From positions 124,001-188,000 of the IMG/VR virus record IMGVR_UViG_3300042402_002564: a stretch of DNA of 64,000 nucleotides; one strand, written 5' to 3'. The notes beneath the pieces were generated by a model, which did not search any database, was not told where the DNA came from, and saw nothing but the letters and a program-made list of their open reading frames with translations. Of this stretch, positions 1 through 5,909 are shown piece by piece (position 1 is the stretch's first letter; every line of letters starts with the position of its first letter). The position numbers were made by a program, and so were the translations under genes.

Positions 1-15
1 CATCATTATTGAACA

Positions 16-150
16 ATGATTGAAGTTCTTGCCGCTTACGTTGTCGGAATGATGCAGGTTGCACCTAATCTCATTCAGACAGATTACCTCAACGAAGACA
101 AGCAAATCATTTCCGTCACTGAAGTAATCCAAGAGGTTCCACAATCATGA
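16..150 (+). CDS. small hypothetical early protein (44 aa)
   Basis: Hand-read ORF MIEVLAAYVVG...; its stop overlaps the next start (ATGA), typical of coupled early genes. Confidence 0.55.
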   Translation: MIEVLAAYVVGMMQVAPNLIQTDYLNEDKQIISVTEVIQEVPQS

Positions 151-293
151 CACTCACACACCTCAACTATCAAGAGATTGATGCCCTGATGGCAATTCTT
201 GAGAGTAGTGATTGGCATTATCTGACTGAACTTGTGGATGCAGACATTCCGCTTCTGTATGACAAACTCACCGAAATGAGGGATGAACTGTGA
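147..293 (+). CDS. small acidic hypothetical protein (48 aa)
   Basis: Hand-read ORF MTLTHLNYQEIDALMAIL...; overlaps both neighbours (ATGA / GTGA). Confidence 0.6.
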   Translation: MTLTHLNYQEIDALMAILESSDWHYLTELVDADIPLLYDKLTEMRDEL

Positions 294-457
294 CTGAAAC
301 TCTCCGACAGTATCACTTCACTGACGAACAGATTGACTTCCTGATGCGAATTGTGCGGAACAATGCACAATTTGAAGATGGTGAAGACCGTGAGTTCATG
401 GAAGAACTTGCCAATCAAATTGAAGATCAAATCGTCAACCATCCTGACAACGACTGA
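290..457 (+). CDS. small acidic hypothetical protein (55 aa, GTG start)
   Basis: Hand-read ORF (M)TETLRQYHFTDEQIDFLMRIV...; TGATG coupling to the next ORF. Confidence 0.6.
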   Translation: MTETLRQYHFTDEQIDFLMRIVRNNAQFEDGEDREFMEELANQIEDQIVNHPDND

Positions 458-657
458 TGACACCTAACGCACCCTACGGTTGCCAAACCTATAAAGATCT
501 GCTGGTCATGTTACAATCTATGACAGCAGAGCAGTTGGACTGCACTCCTACGGTGTATGATCCTGATGCGGATGAGTATTATCCTATCACCACACTTCTC
601 ACCGCATCTGACACCAACGACGTGTTAGACTCTGATCATCCCTACCTCTCCTTCTGA
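457..657 (+). CDS. hypothetical protein (66 aa)
   Basis: ORF track; TGATG coupling on both sides. Confidence 0.7.
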   Translation: MTPNAPYGCQTYKDLLVMLQSMTAEQLDCTPTVYDPDADEYYPITTLLTASDTNDVLDSDHPYLSF

Positions 658-833
658 TGAACCGTTCTGAACTGCAAGACCAACTCATTCAGCAGATGTT
701 GGATGACATGGATCTCAAGACAATGACCCAACTCTGTTATGATTATCTGGATGAGGGTTATGGTAAGTATTCTGATGAGGAATTGATCACTGAATGTGAA
801 GAATACTACCCCGATTTGCTTGAAAATCAATAA
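657..833 (+). CDS. small acidic hypothetical protein (58 aa)
   Basis: Hand-read ORF MNRSELQDQLIQQMLDDMDLKTM...EEYYPDLLENQ; coupled to the upstream stop. Confidence 0.7.
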   Translation: MNRSELQDQLIQQMLDDMDLKTMTQLCYDYLDEGYGKYSDEELITECEEYYPDLLENQ

Positions 834-939
834 AGTATAAATTATTACAGGATGGGTTGGTATCCTGATTGTCACCGATACCATAAAACTCTACAGAGTC
901 TTTCCCGTCCTACCCAATCCCTGAACTGGCACAGACCCC

Positions 940-968
940 TTGACAGGGTGCCAGGAATCGCTTAATCT
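940..968 (+). promoter_or_regulatory. sigma70-type early promoter
   Basis: TTGACA(940-945)-N17-TAATCT(963-968); -35 flanked by inverted repeat CTGGCAC/GTGCCAG; leader hairpin at 979-998. Confidence 0.75.
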
Positions 969-1038
969 AAGAAAACAAGCGGGGGTGAAGCATCCCGCTC
1001 AAAACACTTCACTCAAACCCTTACAATGTGATTTAATT

Positions 1039-1266
1039 ATGTCTCAGTTCGCTTTTACTTCTTCCGCCATCGAAAGCATCTCTGATGTGAATGATGGTAA
1101 AGTGACTATCACCTTCAACGGTGGTCGTGAGTATACCTACGGTGTGCAAGATGTTGAGATGTTCGTGTCTCAACTGAGCACCGTGATTGCCGAACAGCAG
1201 TCCGTGGGTCGTTTTGTAAATAATGCTATCAAAACGGAACAACTGCTCGCAGTGACCGCCGCCTGA
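1039..1266 (+). CDS. KTSC-domain-like protein
   Basis: SSAIESI...VTITFNGGREYTY...SVGRFVNNAIK matches the KTSC pattern (SS.I..+.Y, F..G..Y.Y, S.G.++N..IK); start moved to ATG 1039 downstream of the promoter. Confidence 0.7.
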   Translation: MSQFAFTSSAIESISDVNDGKVTITFNGGREYTYGVQDVEMFVSQLSTVIAEQQSVGRFVNNAIKTEQLLAVTAA

Positions 1267-1319
1267 TAGTATAATACGGGGGGAGGCAACTCCTCCCATC
1301 ACACTACTCCCAAAGAACA

Positions 1320-1484
1320 ATGACTGATTACTTCGACCCTAACGAACAGTTTTCAATCCTTGATCTTATTGATGATTCACAACCTTATGAAGATTTCTCT
1401 CCTGAGGTTAGACAAATGCTTAACGAAGTTGAGTATTACGATGACTACTCTTATGGGGTAGAAGTCGATAATGATTACGACTAA
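1320..1484 (+). CDS. very acidic small hypothetical protein (54 aa)
   Basis: Hand-read ORF MTDYFDPNEQFSILDLIDD...; follows a hairpin plus C/A-rich leader. Confidence 0.55.
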   Translation: MTDYFDPNEQFSILDLIDDSQPYEDFSPEVRQMLNEVEYYDDYSYGVEVDNDYD

Positions 1485-1543
1485 TCTCGACTAGTTAATC
1501 ATCATAATCTCGTCGAGATCACGTCATTAAATCTCGACGAGAT
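1484..1543. repeat. three copies of a 13-bp palindrome ATCTCGWCGAGAT
   Basis: ATCTCGACTAGTT 1484-1496, ATCTCGTCGAGAT 1507-1519, ATCTCGACGAGAT 1531-1543; spacing 23 and 24 bp; intergenic. Confidence 0.85.
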
Positions 1544-1578
1544 ACGCACACAAATCACTTGAAATTCTTCTCTTTAAC

Positions 1579-1713
1579 ATGGAAAATCGTTCGCTCCTGC
1601 TTTCGCTTCTTCGTAAAGGTCAAACTGGTGAAGAAATTCTCCAGATTCTGGAAACTATCATTGGCAGCGATGATGATAGTGATGGTCCTACCCTAAACCC
1701 CATCGATTTCTGA
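1579..1713 (+). CDS. small hypothetical protein (44 aa)
   Basis: Hand-read ORF MENRSLLLSLLRKGQTGEEILQILETII... Confidence 0.6.
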   Translation: MENRSLLLSLLRKGQTGEEILQILETIIGSDDDSDGPTLNPIDF

Positions 1714-1717
1714 TACA

Positions 1718-1906
1718 ATGGAAACTGCATTTGTGACACCCGTATCTAAGAAAGCAAAAAACCGTTTTGCTAATCTTATGGGTGGACTTGATGAGTGTAT
1801 TGTAGAACAACACAAAGGAGACAAAGTGTTCCTCACAAGTGCAAACGGTAAAAACCATTTCTGGGTTAACATTAACAAAGATCCAGACTGGATTGTAGAG
1901 TTCTAA
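1718..1906 (+). CDS. hypothetical protein (62 aa)
   Basis: ORF track; co-oriented with neighbours; followed by a terminator. Confidence 0.75.
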   Translation: METAFVTPVSKKAKNRFANLMGGLDECIVEQHKGDKVFLTSANGKNHFWVNINKDPDWIVEF

Positions 1907-1917
1907 GATTATACCAT

Positions 1918-1943
1918 CCCCCGCCAAGTGCGGGGGTTTTTTT
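1918..1943 (+). terminator. intrinsic terminator
   Basis: CCCCCGC-CAAGT-GCGGGGG followed by T7. Confidence 0.85.
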
Positions 1944-2068
1944 ATACTTTATAGTATGCTTCCCACCCCTCCCGCCCTCTAGCGTAGGGGCGATGCCCCC
2001 CTGAAGTCAACCCCTGAGCCATAAGCATTTCTGATGCAACCCATAAGCGAGACTGATAGGAAAACCCG

Positions 2069-2096
2069 TTGCAGGGTGCCGCCGATGCTGTAGGAT
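2069..2096 (+). promoter_or_regulatory. putative early promoter
   Basis: TTGCAG-N16-TAGGAT; shares CTGTAGGAT with the modules at 2774 and 3503. Confidence 0.5.
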
Positions 2097-2119
2097 TCTG
2101 GCAACGCCAACCCACCCCC

Positions 2120-2734
2120 ATGGCACACACCGACTCCATCATCGCCACCTATTTCCAGAGCAACACTCTGGATCGCCAGACTGGTGCCCAATGGTATAAC
2201 AACGCTTATGGCGTTTGTGTTACTTTGGGTGAAAAGTATGGTGTCCATTCTGACATCGTTGCAGGTGTTATCGCTGCACTTTCTCCTAACAACAAATGGG
2301 AGAGAAATGTAGAGGATGCTGAGGCAATGATCAAAGCATGGGCATACGAAATCTCCTATGATTCGGTTGCAGTTTGTTCCTACTCTGCCAACAAAGACAA
2401 GGCACAAACTATTCTCGATTTGCAACTTAATCGTGAGCAGATTGTTAAAGTTTTGCGTGGCAACAAAACTATTGCTTTCTTCCTTTGTATTGCTAACAAT
2501 GGTGATAGCGATTCTCCCTGCATTGATGGTCACGCTTACAACATTTGGAACGGAACTGTAACTAACCTGAAAGAGGTTCCTTCTATGTCAGACAAGACTT
2601 TCCGCATGATTCAAGATGCCTACCGTGACGCCGCTAAGTTAATCTCTGAGGTGACGGGTTTGCATTATTCAGCGGCACAAGTGCAAGCGATCACCTGGGT
2701 TACGTATCGCAGGATACACAAAAACCTAGTGTGA
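2120..2734 (+). CDS. DUF7178-like phage protein, possible HhH-glycosylase-like fold
   Basis: Motifs G..WY, AGVIAALSP...W..N, K...F..CI, CIDGHA, QVQAITW; ATG 2120 preferred over the TTG inside the promoter. Confidence 0.7.
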   Translation: MAHTDSIIATYFQSNTLDRQTGAQWYNNAYGVCVTLGEKYGVHSDIVAGVIAALSPNNKWERNVEDAEAMIKAWAYEISYDSVAVCSYSANKDKAQTILDLQLNREQIVKVLRGNKTIAFFLCIANNGDSDSPCIDGHAYNIWNGTVTNLKEVPSMSDKTFRMIQDAYRDAAKLISEVTGLHYSAAQVQAITWVTYRRIHKNLV

Positions 2735-2773
2735 CGGATTGTTACAGGGGCATCGCTGGCGATGCCCCCCATG

Positions 2774-2810
2774 CTGTAGGATACTCTCAAGCGGGGCAAA
2801 CGGACCCCGC
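2774..2810 (+). repeat. 37-bp promoter(-10)/leader stem-loop repeat, copy 1
   Basis: CTGTAGGATACTCTCAAGCGGGGCAAACGGACCCCGC; second copy at 3503-3539 with two compensatory changes. Confidence 0.9.
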
Positions 2811-2827
2811 ACAATCGGAAACCCGAA

Positions 2828-2998
2828 ATGTTCACTTCCTGGTCTGCTGCTCCTAAAGGCACTGGCATGGATCACCTGGAATTTTTCACCAGTGAAGAAC
2901 ACGCCGTAGATGTTGCCTACGATTGGAGTATTGAACTCGGTGGCAAACCCATTGTAATCTACTGTAACGAACAGGAATGGATGGAAATCACCGCCTGA
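2828..2998 (+). CDS. small hypothetical protein (56 aa)
   Basis: Hand-read ORF MFTSWSAAPKG...AVDVAYDWSIELGGKPIVIY; directly downstream of repeat copy 1. Confidence 0.7.
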   Translation: MFTSWSAAPKGTGMDHLEFFTSEEHAVDVAYDWSIELGGKPIVIYCNEQEWMEITA

Positions 2999-3049
2999 TT
3001 TGAAACACTTAGGGGGAGAAATCCCCCTCCCATTCTTCACTCTGAAACA

Positions 3050-3220
3050 ATGAAATTCGGTGCAATTGGTGTAACGATTCGCTACCAAACTCCCTACAAT
3101 TCTTGTGAATGGAGAGAGCAAACGTTTGCTACAATTGATGAGGCAAACCGCATGGTAGATTTCTATCGTTCCTGTGGTTCTCCCGCTGAGGTTGTTACTT
3201 TCCGTGAGGCACAAAAATGA
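3050..3220 (+). CDS. small hypothetical protein (56 aa)
   Basis: Hand-read ORF MKFGAIGVTIRYQTPYNSCEWREQTF...MVDFYRSCGSPAE; follows a GAAA hairpin. Confidence 0.7.
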   Translation: MKFGAIGVTIRYQTPYNSCEWREQTFATIDEANRMVDFYRSCGSPAEVVTFREAQK

Positions 3221-3327
3221 AAACATTTGCCCTCATTTTTGCGGTTATGTTTTTAATGTCTCCAGCAGTTAGAAACACTACCGCGAACACTTTACACACC
3301 GCTGCCACCATCATTTCAGCAGAATGA
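3217..3327 (+). CDS. small hydrophobic peptide (36 aa)
   Basis: MKTFALIFAVMFLMSPAVRN...; ATGA-coupled on both sides. Confidence 0.55.
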   Translation: MKTFALIFAVMFLMSPAVRNTTANTLHTAATIISAE

Positions 3328-3491
3328 CACACTATCCCTCCCGCCTTCGTTTCAAACTACCTGCCGAAAGAATCGCTGAGCTGGTAGAAAAGAATTGCAC
3401 CGTCCTAAGTGATAGTGAATGGATGCAATTTTTTGAAGAAATCAACATTATTTCGGATTGTAACGAAACGCCCGAACTGGTCACCCCCTGA
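3324..3491 (+). CDS. small hypothetical protein (55 aa)
   Basis: Hand-read ORF MTHYPSRLRFKLPAERIAELVE...; coupled start. Confidence 0.5.
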   Translation: MTHYPSRLRFKLPAERIAELVEKNCTVLSDSEWMQFFEEINIISDCNETPELVTP

Positions 3492-3502
3492 CCCCCCTGA
3501 CC

Positions 3503-3539
3503 CTGTAGGATACTCTCAAGCGAGGCAAACGGACCTCGC
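3503..3539 (+). repeat. 37-bp promoter(-10)/leader stem-loop repeat, copy 2
   Basis: CTGTAGGATACTCTCAAGCGAGGCAAACGGACCTCGC. Confidence 0.9.
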
Positions 3540-3557
3540 CCAACCCACACCAGACCG

Positions 3558-3818
3558 ATGCTCGCATCCATCATCCGCACCGCCATCCGCACCCGCCTGA
3601 TCAACGATGGCCCCCAGACCTGCTCCGACCTTGTGCGGGCAATGGGTTTGGATCCTCGCCGTCACAAGGGCACCATCCACGCCCTTATGGTCGATCTGGA
3701 AAAGGCAGGCACCCTGTCCGCCACCCGTTCCGATAATGGCAAGCGGGATCTGTGGTTTGTGAACTTTGAGCAAATCCGCAAGCGGGACCGCATCATCGCC
3801 GCCCTCTCTGGAGTGTGA
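3558..3818 (+). CDS. winged helix-turn-helix DNA-binding protein
   Basis: GPQTCSDLVRAMGL...TIHALMVDLEKAGTL...GKRDLW fits the wHTH pattern (helix-turn-helix, L..LE..G.+, wing). Confidence 0.7.
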   Translation: MLASIIRTAIRTRLINDGPQTCSDLVRAMGLDPRRHKGTIHALMVDLEKAGTLSATRSDNGKRDLWFVNFEQIRKRDRIIAALSGV

Positions 3819-3890
3819 ACGATTGTTAACGGGGGCACGATAGGGTGCCCCCACCCTGTAGAATTTAAAAGTCAACACGGGACACACCCC

Positions 3891-4130
3891 ATGACCGCCT
3901 ACGCTTTCACCGACCGCCAGCAGATTGACGAAAATCCTAAAGTCGATTTCGTCGATACTGTTACCGTCAACCTGAAAGTTTCGCCCCGCGAACTTAAGTT
4001 AATGTGTGATGCGTTGATTGAATCTGACCGCTATATGTGTCAGGAAGGCAAACTACAATCGGCAGATCTCCGCCGATGGGATGCAATCCTCGATTATATT
4101 AAGGATCGGGCATTCAACGACGCTTACTGA
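3891..4130 (+). CDS. hypothetical protein (79 aa)
   Basis: ORF track; preceded by an inverted repeat plus CTGTAGAAT -10-like element. Confidence 0.7.
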   Translation: MTAYAFTDRQQIDENPKVDFVDTVTVNLKVSPRELKLMCDALIESDRYMCQEGKLQSADLRRWDAILDYIKDRAFNDAY

Positions 4131-4180
4131 TACAATCGGGGGGAGAAATCCCCCCTTCTCAAACCACCTCACCTAGAACC

Positions 4181-4507
4181 ATGTTCCCCACCGTTCTTCT
4201 CAACAATCCGATGATTGAAAAGTATAACGAACTGCGTCAGGAAGTTCTTTCTAACGACACTGTGCAGCAGGTTCTTTATACTCTCGCCACCGTGCTAGGT
4301 GTTATCGTTGGTGTCACCCTTTGGTGTTACAAACGCATTGCACAATGGTATAACGAAGGTGGCAAAGATTCTTTCTACTTTGGTATCAACACCAGGGCAG
4401 GAAAGGATGATGAACAGTTCGGCATTGGTATATTCAAACTCTACGTGGGTTTGTATAACAATGTCCTACACATTGGGTTCACAGATCACAATGGGTGCCT
4501 GCCCTAA
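4181..4507 (+). CDS. hypothetical membrane protein
   Basis: ORF track; hydrophobic segment VLYTLATVLGVIVGVTLWCY. Confidence 0.6.
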   Translation: MFPTVLLNNPMIEKYNELRQEVLSNDTVQQVLYTLATVLGVIVGVTLWCYKRIAQWYNEGGKDSFYFGINTRAGKDDEQFGIGIFKLYVGLYNNVLHIGFTDHNGCLP

Positions 4508-4549
4508 GTGACACTTATGGGGTGCTGAGTTCTTTATACTTAGCACCCC
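4505..4549. repeat. adjacent palindrome and 12-bp inverted repeat
   Basis: TAAGTG-A-CACTTA (4505-4517); GGGGTGCTGAGT-N7-ACTTAGCACCCC (4519-4549). Confidence 0.8.
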
Positions 4550-4928
4550 TACATTCGTGCGTAAGTGTAAATGTGACAGTCTGTGACAGACAGTTGACGG
4601 TATAACGGTATCGTGATAACGGCGGGCCGTGCCCCCTACCCCCCCCTTAGCTAAAATTGATGACTCCCCTAACCTACAGAGGTGACAAAACGAGTGAGTG
4701 ATTTCATGTTCATAAGAAAAAATTTTACAGAAAAATTTCGCCTCATAAGGTCGATAAAAACCCTCACAAGGGTCTCCGAGAATCCTCACATAAGTATCCG
4801 TATGCAACTAAAGTATGTTATAATGTGTCTCCGAGAGTCTCTATGGATTCTCATATCACACGCCCTTAAAAATTTTTCGAGGGGTCTCAAAGGGGTGATA
4901 TATAGTGATGTAATGAGAAGGTGGTGAG

Positions 4929-5093
4929 ATGGACGACAAAATCTATCACATTTATAACAAAGAGAATCAGTGTGTATCTCCATGTTTATCTGAGGAAGAA
5001 TTCAGTGATACATGGAAAGAACTCACAGAAGATTCTTATGAATATGAAGAACTCGAAGCTTCTTATTCAAAGCAAGAGGAAGCGTCTTATTGA
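4929..5093 (+). CDS. small acidic hypothetical protein (54 aa)
   Basis: Hand-read ORF MDDKIYHIYNKENQCVSPCLSEEEF...EEASY, more protein-like than the overlapping track ORF 4921-5115. Confidence 0.65.
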   Translation: MDDKIYHIYNKENQCVSPCLSEEEFSDTWKELTEDSYEYEELEASYSKQEEASY

Positions 5094-5141: not shown

Positions 5142-5909
5142 ATGGCAAAAGGATTCACAGTAAAGGCCACTGCCCCTACAAAACCAAAGGAGGAGTGGGA
5201 CTATGAAGCAATTAAAGAACGAATGAGGGGGAAGAGCATTGTTTTTTGCCTCCCAGGTCGTGGATGTTCTTATACATTCCTAAAAGCATTTGTACAACTT
5301 TGTTTTGATCTTGTACAAAACGGAATGGCAATTCAAATTTCTCAAGATTATTCTTCGATGGTAAACTTTGCACGTTGCAAAGTTCTTGGTGCAAACGTTC
5401 TCAGAGGTCCGAAGCAAGTTCCCTGGGATGGTAAACTACAATATGATTATCAACTCTGGATTGATAATGACATTGTGTTTAACTCAGAAAAGTTCTGGCA
5501 ACTGTGTGACCTCGCAGTTCCCGCAGAAGGAGATGAAAAAGAAATCGTTGCTGGATGGTATGCAACCGAAGATGGTCACACAACCTCAGTTGCTCACTGG
5601 TTAGAAGAAGATGATTTCCGTCGTAACGGTGGAGTCATGAATCATGAAACCGTTGAATCGATTCAGAAGCGTCGTAAACCATTTACAGTTGACTACACTG
5701 GATTTGGTTGGGTTATGATTCGTAAAGGTGTATTTGAGCGTCTTGAATATCCTTGGTTCGCTCCTAAGATGCAAGTCTTTGAATCTGGGGCAGTACAAGA
5801 TATGTGTGGAGAGGATGTGTCGTTCTGTCTCGATGCAAAAGAGGCAGGCATTGAAACATGGTGTGACCCACGAATTCGTGTTGGACACGAGAAGACTCGC
5901 GTTATCTGA
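5142..5909 (+). CDS. GT-A fold glycosyltransferase-like protein
   Basis: ARC..L, YDYQLWIDNDI (DxD), TGFGWVMIRKGVFE, GEDVSFC, VGHEK motifs. Confidence 0.8.
   Translation: MAKGFTVKATAPTKPKEEWDYEAIKERMRGKSIVFCLPGRGCSYTFLKAFVQLCFDLVQNGMAIQISQDYSSMVNFARCKVLGANVLRGPKQVPWDGKLQYDYQLWIDNDIVFNSEKFWQLCDLAVPAEGDEKEIVAGWYATEDGHTTSVAHWLEEDDFRRNGGVMNHETVESIQKRRKPFTVDYTGFGWVMIRKGVFERLEYPWFAPKMQVFESGAVQDMCGEDVSFCLDAKEAGIETWCDPRIRVGHEKTRVI

What the first reader, a model, noticed from the sequence alone, without database searches (positions are those of the whole stretch)
2774..3539. 37-bp repeat whose only two differences are a compensatory base pair in a leader hairpin
Copy 1 has GCGGGG-CAAACGGA-CCCCGC and copy 2 has GCGAGG-CAAACGGA-CCTCGC. 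A G-C pair is swapped for A-T while the 8-nt loop and the upstream CTGTAGGATACTCTCAA are invariant. The stem starts 9 nt after a TAGGAT -10-like hexamer, so it would sit at the 5' end of the transcript, 18-19 nt before an ATG with no Shine-Dalgarno. This is direct evidence of a selected structure. It could be a 5' stabiliser or a protein-bound translational element. A similar GCGGG...CCCGC stem lies at 979-998.
Basis: seen in the sequence. Interest (0 to 1): 0.7.

Follow-up and report, generated by a model that had tools for sequence, protein, structure and literature searches.

The report
Portable promoter-plus-5′-hairpin cassette in cyanophage
The 37-base repeat is two copies of a small, movable "expression cassette" (a promoter −10 box followed by a hairpin that would cap the start of the mRNA). 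Uncultured freshwater T4-like cyanophages place it in front of many unrelated small genes, and the hairpin's base pairing is clearly kept by selection.

Summary
The copies at 2774-2810 and 3503-3539 differ at only two bases, and those two changes turn a G-C stem pair into A-T.

The window lies in a 246.5-kb T4-like cyanomyovirus. Bases 1-5000 form a GC-rich island of small genes of unknown function, each with its own promoter.

The same hairpin was found in IMG/VR and metagenome contigs.
- It occurs in 38 distinct sequence contexts, in front of about 30 different genes.
- It always lies 8-9 nt after a TAnnnT −10 box and 14-21 nt before an ATG, across a C/A-rich leader that mostly lacks a Shine-Dalgarno sequence.
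- 99.6% of stem cells are paired, and three of the six pairs covary.
- G·U occurs six times and A·C once, which points to folding of the sense-strand RNA.
- When either arm was left free in the search, no family member had a broken stem.

The loop is not universal, and some orthologous genes lack the hairpin.

Best reading: this is a PeSL-like mobile promoter cassette whose extra, transcribed stem-loop sits 2-3 nt from the 5′ end of the mRNA. It most likely protects or insulates the transcript. That function and the exact start site are inferred, not shown. I rate it a new variant of a known kind, of moderate interest.

The parts
2774..2810 (+). Repeat copy 1: −10 region plus 5′ hairpin of the cassette in front of ORFan g2828
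2747..2768 (+). Upstream GC stem-loop (GGGGCATCG-CTGG-CGATGCCCC), after the stop of g2120 and before the −10. This is the classic PeSL-type stem-loop, a likely terminator or 3′-end hairpin for upstream transcripts.
   Evidence: The L027 orthologue has a different sequence that also pairs.
2777..2782 (+). −10 hexamer TAGGAT (copy 1). No convincing −35 lies 16-18 nt upstream.
   Evidence: Read from the sequence. T1/A2/T6 are kept across 38 contexts.
2791..2810 (+). Hairpin 1: GCGGGG / CAAACGGA / CCCCGC. The predicted start is A2789 or A2790, which leaves 1-2 unpaired 5′ nt.
2811..2998 (+). 17-nt C/A-rich leader without a Shine-Dalgarno sequence, then ORFan g2828 (56 aa, ATG 2828)
3503..3539 (+). 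Repeat copy 2: −10 TAGGAT 3506-3511 plus hairpin 3520-3539 (GCGAGG / CAAACGGA / CCTCGC). The predicted start is A3518 or A3519.
3540..3818 (+). 18-nt C/A-rich leader, then ORFan g3558 (86 aa, ATG 3558)
940..968 (+). Full sigma-70-type promoter TTGACA-N17-TAATCT of the g1039 cassette
   Evidence: Read from the sequence. Promoters differ among relatives.
978..1038 (+). Third family hairpin (A-GCGGGG / GTGAAGCA / TCCCGC-T, 978-999) plus leader. The stretch is nucleotide-invariant in 8 relatives. An RNA-library contig ends at 975, the predicted start.
2069..2119 (+). The same CTGTAGGAT promoter type (TTGCAG-N16-TAGGAT) without the hairpin, in front of g2120 (DUF7178). This is a natural hairpin-less form of the leader.
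   Evidence: (D1, D3)
3831..3864 (+). Upstream stem-loop GGGGGCAC/GTGCCCCC (3831-3852) plus CTGTAGAAT (−10 at 3859-3864), in front of g3891. This cassette has no 5′ hairpin.
   Evidence: (D3)

Best explanation
**What it is.** The two copies are instances of a portable promoter-leader cassette. It is used by a lineage of uncultured freshwater or wetland T4-like cyanomyoviruses, inside a GC-rich hyperplastic island of small genes of unknown function.

**Anatomy.**
- An optional upstream GC stem-loop, which in many relatives carries a TTGAC −35 in its loop.
- A −10 box TAnnnT.
- 8-9 nt of spacer ending in CAA.
- A 6-bp GC stem with a loop of about 8 nt.
- A 14-21-nt C/A-rich leader that mostly lacks a Shine-Dalgarno sequence.
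- The ATG.

**Shown.**
- The repeat is real.
- The stem is kept by selection, through compensatory changes at three pairs, with G·U tolerated far more often than A·C.
- The −10 box and both spacings are conserved.
- The cassette precedes about 30 different genes.
- Homology with relatives breaks at cassette edges.

**Inferred.**
- Host RNA polymerase starts at the A or AA just 5′ of the stem, so the hairpin sits 1-3 nt from the 5′ end of the mRNA.
- There it acts as a 5′-terminal protective stem-loop. It would hinder 5′-end-dependent decay (pyrophosphate removal, then RNase E or RNase J entry).
- It would also insulate a standard unstructured leader from whatever gene has been shuffled in behind it.
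- Because the cassette is repeated, it also provides homology for PeSL-style gene shuffling.
For: **Repeat and fold:**

**Family and covariation.**
- IMG/VR scans with free stem positions gave only complementary combinations in family context, while chance hits had random arms.
- The metagenome scan added GCGGGA/TCCCGC, GCGAGA/TCTCGC, GCGGGC/GCCCGC and G·U intermediates.
- On 38 distinct contexts, 99.6% of cells are paired, 3 of 6 pairs have double changes, and 0 of 500 shuffles reach the score. Sliding the 3′ partners by 1-3 columns gives 35-69% paired.
- G·U occurs 6 times and A·C once.

**Promoter geometry.**
- The hexamers include TAGGAT, TACAAT, TATAAT, TAGTAT, TAAGAT, TACACT and TATACT, among others.
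- The spacing to the stem is 8 nt in 39 of 51 contexts.
- The distance from hairpin to ATG is 14-21 nt.
- Leader composition is A 35%, C 40%, G 15%, T 10%.
- There are 35 distinct N-termini.

**Gene independence and shuffling:**, and the 2734→3851 joint in an RNA-library contig.

**GC island:**

**Start site:** an exact-match RNA-library contig ends at 975, the 7th nt after TAATCT and 3 nt before the third hairpin. Depth is zero upstream of it.

**Known biology.**
- PeSL cassettes are described in PMC2839356 and PMC4122927.
- 5′-end-dependent decay needs unpaired 5′ nucleotides, and 5′ stem-loops stabilise mRNAs. This comes from the review PMC3997798 and the Emory/Bouvet/Belasco papers it cites.
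Against: - No start site was mapped for copies 1 and 2. RNA-library contigs of relatives run across the copy-2 promoter and hairpin (3394-3591 and 3460-3707). Either read-through RNA or contaminating DNA exists there.
- Orthologues of both downstream genes exist without the hairpin, so it is dispensable.
- No half-life data exist.
- The two window cassettes have no recognisable −35.
- The CAAACGGA loop is far more conserved than a purely structural role needs.
- Only the 5′-end dependence of E. coli and B. subtilis enzymes is documented in what I read. Extending it to the cyanobacterial host is an extrapolation.
- Invariance of stem pairs 1, 3 and 5 is partly built in by the search patterns.
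Confidence: 0.6

Rival explanations
1. The hairpin works on transcripts coming from upstream. It would be a terminator, attenuator or 3′-end protective stem-loop for the preceding gene(s), as shown for the stem-loop of RB49 PeSLs. Its position after the −10 box would then be incidental.
For: - PeSL stem-loops terminate transcription in reporter assays (PMC2839356).
- Copy 2 has no other hairpin between the stop of g3324 (3491) and g3558.
- From my own knowledge, cyanobacteria lack Rho, so hairpins matter for 3′ ends.
Against: - No U-tract follows. The invariant 3′ flank is ACAAC-like, and the terminator scan does not call it, while it does call 1918-1936.
- Copy 1 already has a separate stem-loop upstream of the −10 (2747-2768).
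- A terminator would not need a fixed 8-9 nt distance from the −10 or 14-21 nt to the ATG.
- RNA-library contigs run through the copy-2 hairpin.
- This role does not exclude the 5′ role.
Confidence: 0.13
2. The hairpin is an operator for a sequence-specific factor, either a phage or host RNA-binding protein (translational repressor or activator) or an sRNA. The factor would recognise the CAAACGGA loop and co-regulate the island genes.
For: - The loop is identical in 38 contexts whose promoters, leaders and genes differ.
- Several other loops share a C-R…GG-W pattern: CGACAGGA, CGATCGGT, CGGAGGT, CAGGGA, CAAAGGT.
- The hairpin ends 14-21 nt from the ATG, at about the 5′ edge of the expected ribosome binding region (own knowledge), so a bound protein could affect initiation.
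Against: - An orthologous leader of the copy-2 gene carries the unrelated loop GCAAGGTT, or no hairpin at all.
- Other members have ACACA, ACAGGAA or GTGAAGCA loops.
- The shared loop may reflect recent spread of one cassette allele by recombination.
- No candidate binding protein was identified. The island proteins have no informative Pfam or PHROG match.
Confidence: 0.13
3. The repeat has no RNA function. It is just a recently duplicated or recombined piece of promoter DNA, a PeSL-type recombination substrate or a DNA hairpin/cruciform. The compensatory pair would then be chance or a DNA-level constraint.
For: - Cassette-bounded shuffling is evident.
- RB49 mini-circle crossovers map inside the PeSL stem-loop.
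- The block has sharp borders.
Against: - The chance of the two-site pattern is about 0.003 (own arithmetic).
- Three stem positions covary across 38 contexts.
- G·U 6 versus A·C 1 is the asymmetry expected for the sense strand only.
- Both one-arm-free searches found no broken stems.
- Single-stranded + strand DNA cannot be formally excluded.
Confidence: 0.06
4. The nascent hairpin acts on RNA polymerase itself. It could aid promoter escape, cause promoter-proximal pausing, or give put-like antitermination.
For: The fixed position at +2/+3 to +22 means the hairpin would form as the transcript emerges from the polymerase. This is inference only.
Against: - Nothing in the data speaks for it.
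- From my own knowledge, put RNAs are two-stem elements of about 70 nt.
- There is no Rfam match.
Confidence: 0.04

Closest known systems
PeSL (promoter-early stem-loop) cassettes of T4-type phages RB49/phi1, PST/T4 and nt-1/KVP40 (Arbiol et al. 2010, PMC2839356; Comeau et al. 2014, PMC4122927)
   Same: - A short composite promoter-plus-GC-stem-loop motif, repeated between small ORFan genes in a hyperplastic region of a T4-like genome.
- Poly-G/poly-C stems.
- An upstream stem-loop between or around the −35 and −10, seen here at 2747-2768 and 3831-3852, with TTGAC in the loop in relatives.
- Gene content is shuffled among close relatives, with breakpoints at the motifs.
   Different: - The stem-loop in this finding lies downstream of the −10, so it would be transcribed as the 5′ end of the mRNA. 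PeSL stem-loops lie upstream of, between or over the promoter boxes and act as terminators.
- Many cassettes here have no −35 and most no Shine-Dalgarno sequence, whereas PeSLs end in SD + ATG.
- The hosts are cyanobacteria.
- The one cyanophage paper that looked for PeSLs (S-PM2, PMC4503421) found only sparse candidates.
- Mini-circle formation was not tested.
5′-terminal stabilising stem-loops of bacterial mRNAs: ompA and papA 5′ UTR hairpins in E. coli, and the aprE leader in B. subtilis (cited in PMC3997798)
   Same: - A GC-rich hairpin within a few nucleotides of the predicted 5′ end.
- It is independent of the coding sequence and portable between genes.
   Different: - Here the 5′ end is inferred and no half-life has been measured.
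- The element is a phage-borne, multi-copy, sequence-conserved cassette rather than a gene-specific leader.
- The host nucleases would be cyanobacterial.
Rho-independent (intrinsic) terminators
   Same: A GC-rich 6-bp stem with a short loop in an intergenic region, directly after a stop codon (copy 2).
   Different: - There is no 3′ U-tract.
- The distances to a −10 box and to the next ATG are fixed.
- A genuine terminator with a T7 tail exists nearby at 1918-1936 for comparison.
Translational operators in T4 leaders (the gene 32 5′ pseudoknot and RegA sites; own knowledge, and reviewed in PMC3014915, which I did not read)
   Same: A structured element in the 5′ leader of T4-type phage mRNAs. 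The third family member (978-1012) even has loop-to-downstream complementarity compatible with a pseudoknot.
   Different: - There is no sequence or structural match.
- Copies 1 and 2 have no pseudoknot potential.
- The loop varies among relatives.

Membership tests
PeSL cassette (T4-type phages) | Lies in a hyperplastic region of a T4-like genome, between small variable/ORFan genes | tested here: met
   - The genome is a T4-like cyanomyovirus.
- The island at 1-5000 is 43-57% GC against 33.8% for the genome.
- Its genes are small, mostly without a Pfam or PHROG match.
- Their order and content differ among relatives.
PeSL cassette (T4-type phages) | Contains a sigma-70-like early promoter (−35, about 17 nt of spacer, −10) | tested here: inconclusive
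   - A −10 TAnnnT is conserved at a fixed distance in all contexts.
- A full TTGACA-N17-TAATCT is present at 940-968, and TTGAC-N17/18 is present in many relatives.
- Copies 1 and 2 have no recognisable −35, and the generic scan does not call them.
- Promoter activity was not measured.
PeSL cassette (T4-type phages) | GC-rich stem-loop next to or overlapping the promoter boxes, acting as a terminator for upstream transcription | tested here: inconclusive
   - Such stem-loops exist at 2747-2768, 3831-3852 and 4138-4155.
- The hairpin of this finding is instead downstream of the −10 and has no U-tract.
- Terminator activity cannot be tested here.
PeSL cassette (T4-type phages) | Mediates insertion, deletion or replacement of flanked genes (recombination between cassettes, mini-circles) | tested here: inconclusive
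   - Homology breakpoints fall at 2783/3012 and at 978.
- An RNA-library contig has a cassette-bounded 1116-bp indel.
- The same cassette precedes about 30 different genes.
- Mini-circles and recombination were not observed directly.
PeSL cassette (T4-type phages) | Ends in a Shine-Dalgarno sequence and a start codon | tested here: not met
   The ATG is present, but the leaders are C/A-rich. GGAG, GAGG or AGGA occurs in only 10 of 51 contexts, and in neither window copy.
5′-terminal mRNA-stabilising stem-loop | The stem begins within about 0-4 nt of the transcript's 5′ end | tested here: inconclusive
   - Predicted from −10 geometry: the 7th nt after the hexamer is A2789, A3518 and A975.
- One exact-match RNA-library contig ends at 975.
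- Contigs of relatives cross the copy-2 promoter.
- No true 5′-end mapping is available.
5′-terminal mRNA-stabilising stem-loop | Base pairing, not sequence, is what is conserved | tested here: met
   - Three covarying pairs, 99.6% of cells paired, and 0 of 500 shuffles reaching the score.
- The one-arm-free searches found no broken stems.
- The loops vary.
5′-terminal mRNA-stabilising stem-loop | Lengthens mRNA half-life in a way that depends on the 5′-end decay pathway | not testable with these tools
   Needs rifampicin-chase or reporter experiments.
Intrinsic terminator | GC stem followed directly by a U-rich tract | tested here: not met
   ACAATC or CCAACC follows the stem, and the element is not called by the terminator scan.
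Any Rfam family | Match to a curated covariance model | tested here: not met
   There are 0 hits at gathering score in the whole window. At 900-4200 only chance-level hits with E 0.2-0.8 appear, and they lie elsewhere.

The most novel reading that the evidence does not exclude
The hairpin may be more than a passive 5′ cap. It could be the recognition tag of a phage-specific post-transcriptional regulon. A factor, either a phage or host protein or an sRNA, would read the CAAACGGA-type loop on the 5′ end of many early ORFan mRNAs and switch them on or off together. The tag would travel with the promoter as a self-contained mobile expression module that any newly acquired gene can plug into. That would make it a new class of mobile cis-regulatory RNA element in cyanophages.
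Probability: 0.15. Interest if true: 0.65.

Novelty: new variant of a known kind. Interest (0 to 1): 0.45.

Why it matters
**Extends a known mechanism.** PeSL cassettes are the only proposed mechanism for how T4-type phages shuffle accessory genes while keeping them expressed. They have been described for phages of Escherichia, Yersinia and Vibrio. This finding extends the idea to uncultured freshwater cyanophages.

**Adds a new component.** The cassette here carries a transcribed, covariation-supported 5′ stem-loop joined to a standard leader that mostly lacks a Shine-Dalgarno sequence.

**Practical uses.**
- It marks probable early promoters and transcription starts in genomes that have no cultured host.
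- It supplies natural variants for testing: hairpin present or absent, G-C, A-U or G·U pairs, and different loops.
- It is a compact candidate part (about 60 nt of promoter, 5′ hairpin and leader) for expression in picocyanobacteria.

**Limits.** The element is narrowly distributed. It was absent from 50,697 isolated phage genomes and from the prokaryote species genomes scanned (cyanobacteria included). It occurred in only 3 or 4 of 80 contigs anchored on the neighbouring conserved gene, many of which hold little upstream sequence. It is not a general feature of cyanophages.

Tried and rejected
- **Rfam.** No family matched at gathering score in the window. A permissive scan of 900-4200 gave nothing on the element.
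- **Isolated phages.** blastn of 2774-2830 against 50,697 records found no match. The covariance model R1 found nothing in S-SRM01, the closest cultured relative, or in an unrelated 224-kb IMG/VR genome.
- **Host origin.** A scan of one genome per prokaryote species found 6 exact hairpin matches. All were in GC-rich non-cyanobacterial genomes and none had the −10/ATG context, so they are chance.
- **Start-site mapping from public RNA runs.** Only assembled contigs were available. For copies 1 and 2 they are uninformative or cross the promoter. For the 979 hairpin, one contig ends at the predicted start. I treat this as weak, single-contig evidence.
- **−35 search.** No hexamer with more than 3 of 6 matches lies 16-18 nt upstream of either TAGGAT. 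TTGTTA at 2739-2744 is 32 nt away and belongs to the conserved end of the upstream gene region.
- **Intrinsic terminator.** Rejected, because there is no U-tract.
- **Loop-to-downstream pairing (pseudoknot) for copies 1 and 2.** No complement of CAAACGGA lies in either leader. Such complementarity exists only in the 978-1012 leader.
- **DNA operator for a dimeric protein.** Symmetric double changes, G·U tolerance and variable loops fit pairing better than half-site recognition.
- **Other CTGTAGRAT sites in the window** (18222, 27253−, 43983). They lie in AT-rich coding sequence without a hairpin, so they are chance.
- **Sample anchored on the neighbouring conserved gene g5142** (80 loci). Only 3 or 4 hold the element. 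It is lineage-restricted, so this set added no new variants.
Full report
**1. The observation**

The window is G000:C1:124001-188000 of a 246.5-kb IMG/VR virus with direct terminal repeats. Its baseplate and neighbouring genes match T4-like Synechococcus phages (S-SRM01, S-SCSM1, Bellamy and others) at about 70% DNA identity.

The 37-nt block CTGTAGGATACTCTCAA-GCGGGG-CAAACGGA-CCCCGC at 2774-2810 recurs at 3503-3539. It has exactly two differences, G2794→A and C2807→T, and these are the two partners of stem pair 4. No other copy exists in the window or the genome, and 0 are expected by chance.

Identity stops abruptly on both sides of the block (family D1). RNAfold gives the 6-bp, 8-nt-loop hairpin as the minimum-free-energy fold of both leaders, whether the RNA is started at the promoter or at the predicted +1.

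My own arithmetic: two random substitutions in 37 nt hit one stem pair and stay Watson-Crick with probability of about 6/666 × 1/3 ≈ 0.003.

The stem starts at the 9th nt after TAGGAT. The ATG begins 18 or 19 nt after the stem. There is no Shine-Dalgarno sequence. The 979-998 stem is also there.

**2. The surroundings**

Bases 1-5000 of the window (genome about 120.5-129 kb) form a GC-rich island. It is 43-57% GC against 33.8% for the genome.

The island is packed with + strand genes of 36-108 aa, plus one of 204 aa (DUF7178). The rest have no Pfam family above its curated cut-off, and most have no PHROG match.

Nearly every intergenic gap holds a promoter-like −10 and one or two GC hairpins.
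- **940-999:** TTGACA-N17-TAATCT, then a hairpin.
- **2069-2096:** TTGCAG-N16-TAGGAT, with no hairpin.
- **2747-2810:** an upstream stem-loop, TAGGAT, then the 5′ hairpin (copy 1).
- **3503-3539:** TAGGAT, then the 5′ hairpin (copy 2).
- **3831-3864:** a stem-loop, then TAGAAT.
- **3012-3027 and 4138-4155:** GNRA-loop hairpins directly after stop codons.
- **1918-1936:** one canonical terminator with a T7 tail.

**3. The element elsewhere**

*First scan.* An IMG/VR scan with the stem pair left free (AAGCGNGGCAAACGGACCNCGC) found 24 contigs. Every site had G..C or A..T. Every site lay 6 nt (plus AA) after a TAnnAT hexamer and 13-20 nt before an ATG, in front of different genes.

*Freeing more positions* (GNNNGG…CCNNNC) added three stems:
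- GGGGGG/CCCCCC
- GGGAGG/CCTCCC
- GGGGGG/CCTCCC, which has a G·U pair

More than 80 chance hits in the same scan had mostly non-complementary arms.

*One-arm-free tests.* Two tests removed any bias towards pairing.
- With the 5′ arm and loop fixed and the 3′ arm free, all 16 family-context sites were paired. Fourteen were perfect and two had an inner G·U. The 23 other hits had random arms.
- With the loop and 3′ arm fixed and the 5′ arm free, all 14 family sites were perfect.

*Metagenome scan.* This added GCGGGA/TCCCGC, GCGAGA/TCTCGC, GCGGGC/GCCCGC, five contexts with an inner G·U, one G·U intermediate at pair 4, and a single A·C mismatch.

*Pair counts.* On 38 distinct contexts (alignment A5):
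- 99.6% of cells form standard pairs.
- Pairs 2, 4 and 6 show double-sided changes: C-G/G-C; G-C/A-U/G·U; and G-C/A-U/C-G/G·U.
- 0 of 500 shuffles reach the observed covariation score or the percentage paired.
- Sliding the 3′ partner by 1-3 columns gives 35-69% paired.

*Caveats.* The contexts are related. One allele can be spread by recombination, so cells are not independent events. The invariance of pairs 1, 3 and 5 is partly imposed by the patterns used.

*Strand.* G·U 6 versus A·C 1 is the asymmetry expected if the + (sense) strand folds, that is, the mRNA.

**4. What varies and what does not**

A covariance model (R1) and a flank-anchored scan found diverged members of the form CAAGCGGG(N)-loop-(N)CCCGCACAAC. 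Their loops include GCAAGGTT, CGACAGGA, CGATCGGT, CGGGGA, CGGAGGT, CAGGGA, CAAAGGT, ACACA and ACAGGAA. The window's own 976-1004 member has GTGAAGCA and scores E = 5.6. So the loop is not invariant.

What is constant:
- a −10 box with T1, A2 and T6 kept and positions 3-5 free, for example TAGGAT, TACAAT, TATAAT, TAGTAT, TAAGAT, TACACT, TATACT, TACATT and TATAGT
- 8-9 nt from the box to the stem, with the last three nt usually CAA
- a GC stem
- an ACAAC-like 3′ flank
- a 14-21-nt leader of 75% A+C, with an SD-like tetramer in only 10 of 51 contexts
- the ATG

With the usual 7-nt distance from the −10 to +1 (own knowledge), transcription would start at the A or AA just before the stem. That leaves 1-3 unpaired 5′ nucleotides.

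**5. Gene independence and shuffling**

The 51 contexts that pass the −10/ATG filter (a few of which are chance hits) have 35 different N-termini.

Orthologous genes carry different leaders.
- **g3558.** It is preceded by the CAAACGGA hairpin in the window, L019, L012 and L024. In L027 it is preceded by a GCAAGGTT-loop hairpin. In one RNA-library contig it is preceded by a GCGGG-ACACA-CCCGC hairpin. In L011, L079, L215 and L097 it has no hairpin.
- **g2828.** It has the hairpin only in the window and L027.
- **g2120.** It has the same CTGTAGGAT promoter in all relatives but never the hairpin. Its leader (TAGGAT-TCTGGC-AA-CGCC-AACCC) reads like the hairpin form with the stem-loop removed.

Homology with relatives breaks at cassette edges. 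The breakpoints are 2783 and 3012 against L019 and L012, and 978, the first base of the third hairpin, against L006, L079 and L004. One wetland RNA-library contig joins 2734 to 3851. It replaces 1116 bp, which includes both repeat copies, with a single stem-loop.

The third hairpin and its leader (978-1038) are nucleotide-invariant in 8 relatives. Their proteins are only 56-79% identical and their promoters differ.

**6. Distribution**

- No match was found in 50,697 isolated phage genomes.
- The covariance model found none in S-SRM01.
- Species-representative prokaryote genomes gave none in cyanobacteria and only chance hits in other bacteria.
- Only 3 or 4 of 80 contigs anchored on the conserved neighbour g5142 carry it.
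- Carriers have 1-3 strict copies, all in the homologous island.
- RNA libraries that hold pieces of the island come from wetland, lake, freshwater, aquatic, estuary, salt-marsh and marine samples, most of them freshwater-type.

**7. Transcript evidence**

Only assembled contigs were available, so the evidence is weak.
- For the third cassette, a contig identical to the window spans 975-1212 and stops at 975. That is exactly the 7th nt after TAATCT and 3 nt before the stem. Depth is zero from 835 to 969.
- A relative's contig runs on upstream of 978, through that relative's own promoter region.
- Contigs of relatives cross the copy-2 promoter.

So read-through RNA, or DNA in the libraries, also exists. 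The start sites of copies 1 and 2 remain inferred.

**8. Mechanism**

*Shown.* This is a conserved, gene-independent cassette. Its −10 box, spacings and stem pairing are under selection.

*Inferred.* The stem-loop is the 5′-terminal structure of the early mRNAs. 5′-terminal stem-loops with very few unpaired nucleotides block the 5′-end-dependent decay pathway. That pathway needs unpaired 5′ nucleotides for pyrophosphate removal and for nuclease entry (PMC3997798, citing Emory 1992, Bouvet and Belasco 1992, Arnold 1998 and Hambraeus 2002).

A cassette that supplies a promoter, a protective 5′ cap-like hairpin and an unstructured C/A-rich leader would give any shuffled-in ORF a context-independent expression signal. 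That it is dispensable in orthologues fits a modulatory role.

The rivals are not mutually exclusive:
- a terminator or 3′ hairpin for upstream transcripts
- a loop-specific operator
- DNA-level recombination only
- an effect on RNA polymerase

They are scored in their own sections of this report.

**9. Comparison with what is known**

The closest described system is the PeSL cassette of T4-type phages.

*Shared features:*
- a promoter plus a poly-G/poly-C stem-loop
- a location between ORFans in hyperplastic regions
- shuffling at the motifs

The island's upstream stem-loops (2747-2768, 3831-3852 and 4138-4155) are PeSL-like in position.

*Differences:*
- The hairpin of this finding is downstream of the −10, so it would be transcribed.
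- Most leaders have no Shine-Dalgarno sequence.
- The −35 is often absent.

PeSLs have not been reported in cyanophages beyond a negative remark for S-PM2. My literature searches found no description of this motif. The paper library is incomplete, so prior description cannot be excluded.

**10. Verdict**

The element is a new variant of a known kind: a PeSL-like mobile promoter cassette with an added 5′ stem-loop. Interest is moderate. The covariation evidence is unusually clean for such a small element, but the concept is not new and the distribution is narrow.

Noticed in passing
window 1484-1560: Three copies of an operator-like palindrome (AATCTCGACTAG, AATCTCGTCGAGAT, AATCTCGACGAGAT) lie upstream of g1579. 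The same motif array is conserved upstream of the orthologue in L027, L021 and L018, and in front of other genes in L215, L225 and L020. Weak Rfam 'mir-M7' hits on both strands are just this palindrome. This is probably a binding-site array for a phage DNA-binding protein.
   Followed up: partly
window 978-1038: The leader of g1039 is nucleotide-invariant in 8 relatives, although the protein is only 56-79% identical and the promoters differ. Loop bases GTGAAG (985-990) are complementary to CTTCAC (1007-1012), with an A-rich 7-nt linker between them. That fits an H-type pseudoknot or an alternative fold, and the MFE fold of 975-1060 uses this pairing. Words from this stretch occur in about 20 aquatic metatranscriptomes, most of them freshwater-type.
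   Followed up: partly
window 3012-3027 and 4138-4155: GNRA-tetraloop hairpins (GGGGGA-GAAA-TCCCCC and GGGGGGA-GAAA-TCCCCCC) lie directly after stop codons. The L027 orthologue of the first has GCAA, which is still GNRA. The second starts 1 nt after TACAAT (4131-4136), so a transcript from that −10 would begin inside the stem. That is classic PeSL geometry.
   Followed up: partly
window 2734→3851: A wetland RNA-library contig (X1) joins 2734 to 3851, with 33 other letters in between that form a stem-loop. In that relative the 1116 bp holding g2828 to g3558 and both repeat copies are absent. L012 and L019 show a related arrangement.
   Followed up: partly
window 1-5000 (genome 120.5-129 kb): A GC-rich island, 43-57% GC in a 33.8% GC genome. 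Other smaller GC peaks lie at genome 175-176.5, 225-227 and 240-241 kb. These were not examined.
   Followed up: partly
window 2120-2734: A 204-aa protein of family DUF7178 (PF23802, E 5e-41; phrog_3842) is the only island gene with a Pfam family above its curated cut-off.
   Followed up: no
window 5142-5909: A conserved 255-aa protein (phrog_1574; weak match to a glycosyltransferase PHROG) sits between the island and the baseplate wedge genes. It has more than 600 relatives in IMG/VR and serves as a handy anchor for the hyperplastic region.
   Followed up: partly
L006, L008, L009, L016 (relatives): The upstream stem-loop often carries the −35 hexamer TTGAC(G) in its loop, 17-18 nt from the −10, and it covaries too. 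An example is ggggcaggTTGACgcctgcccc versus ggggcaccTTGACgggtgcccc.
   Followed up: partly
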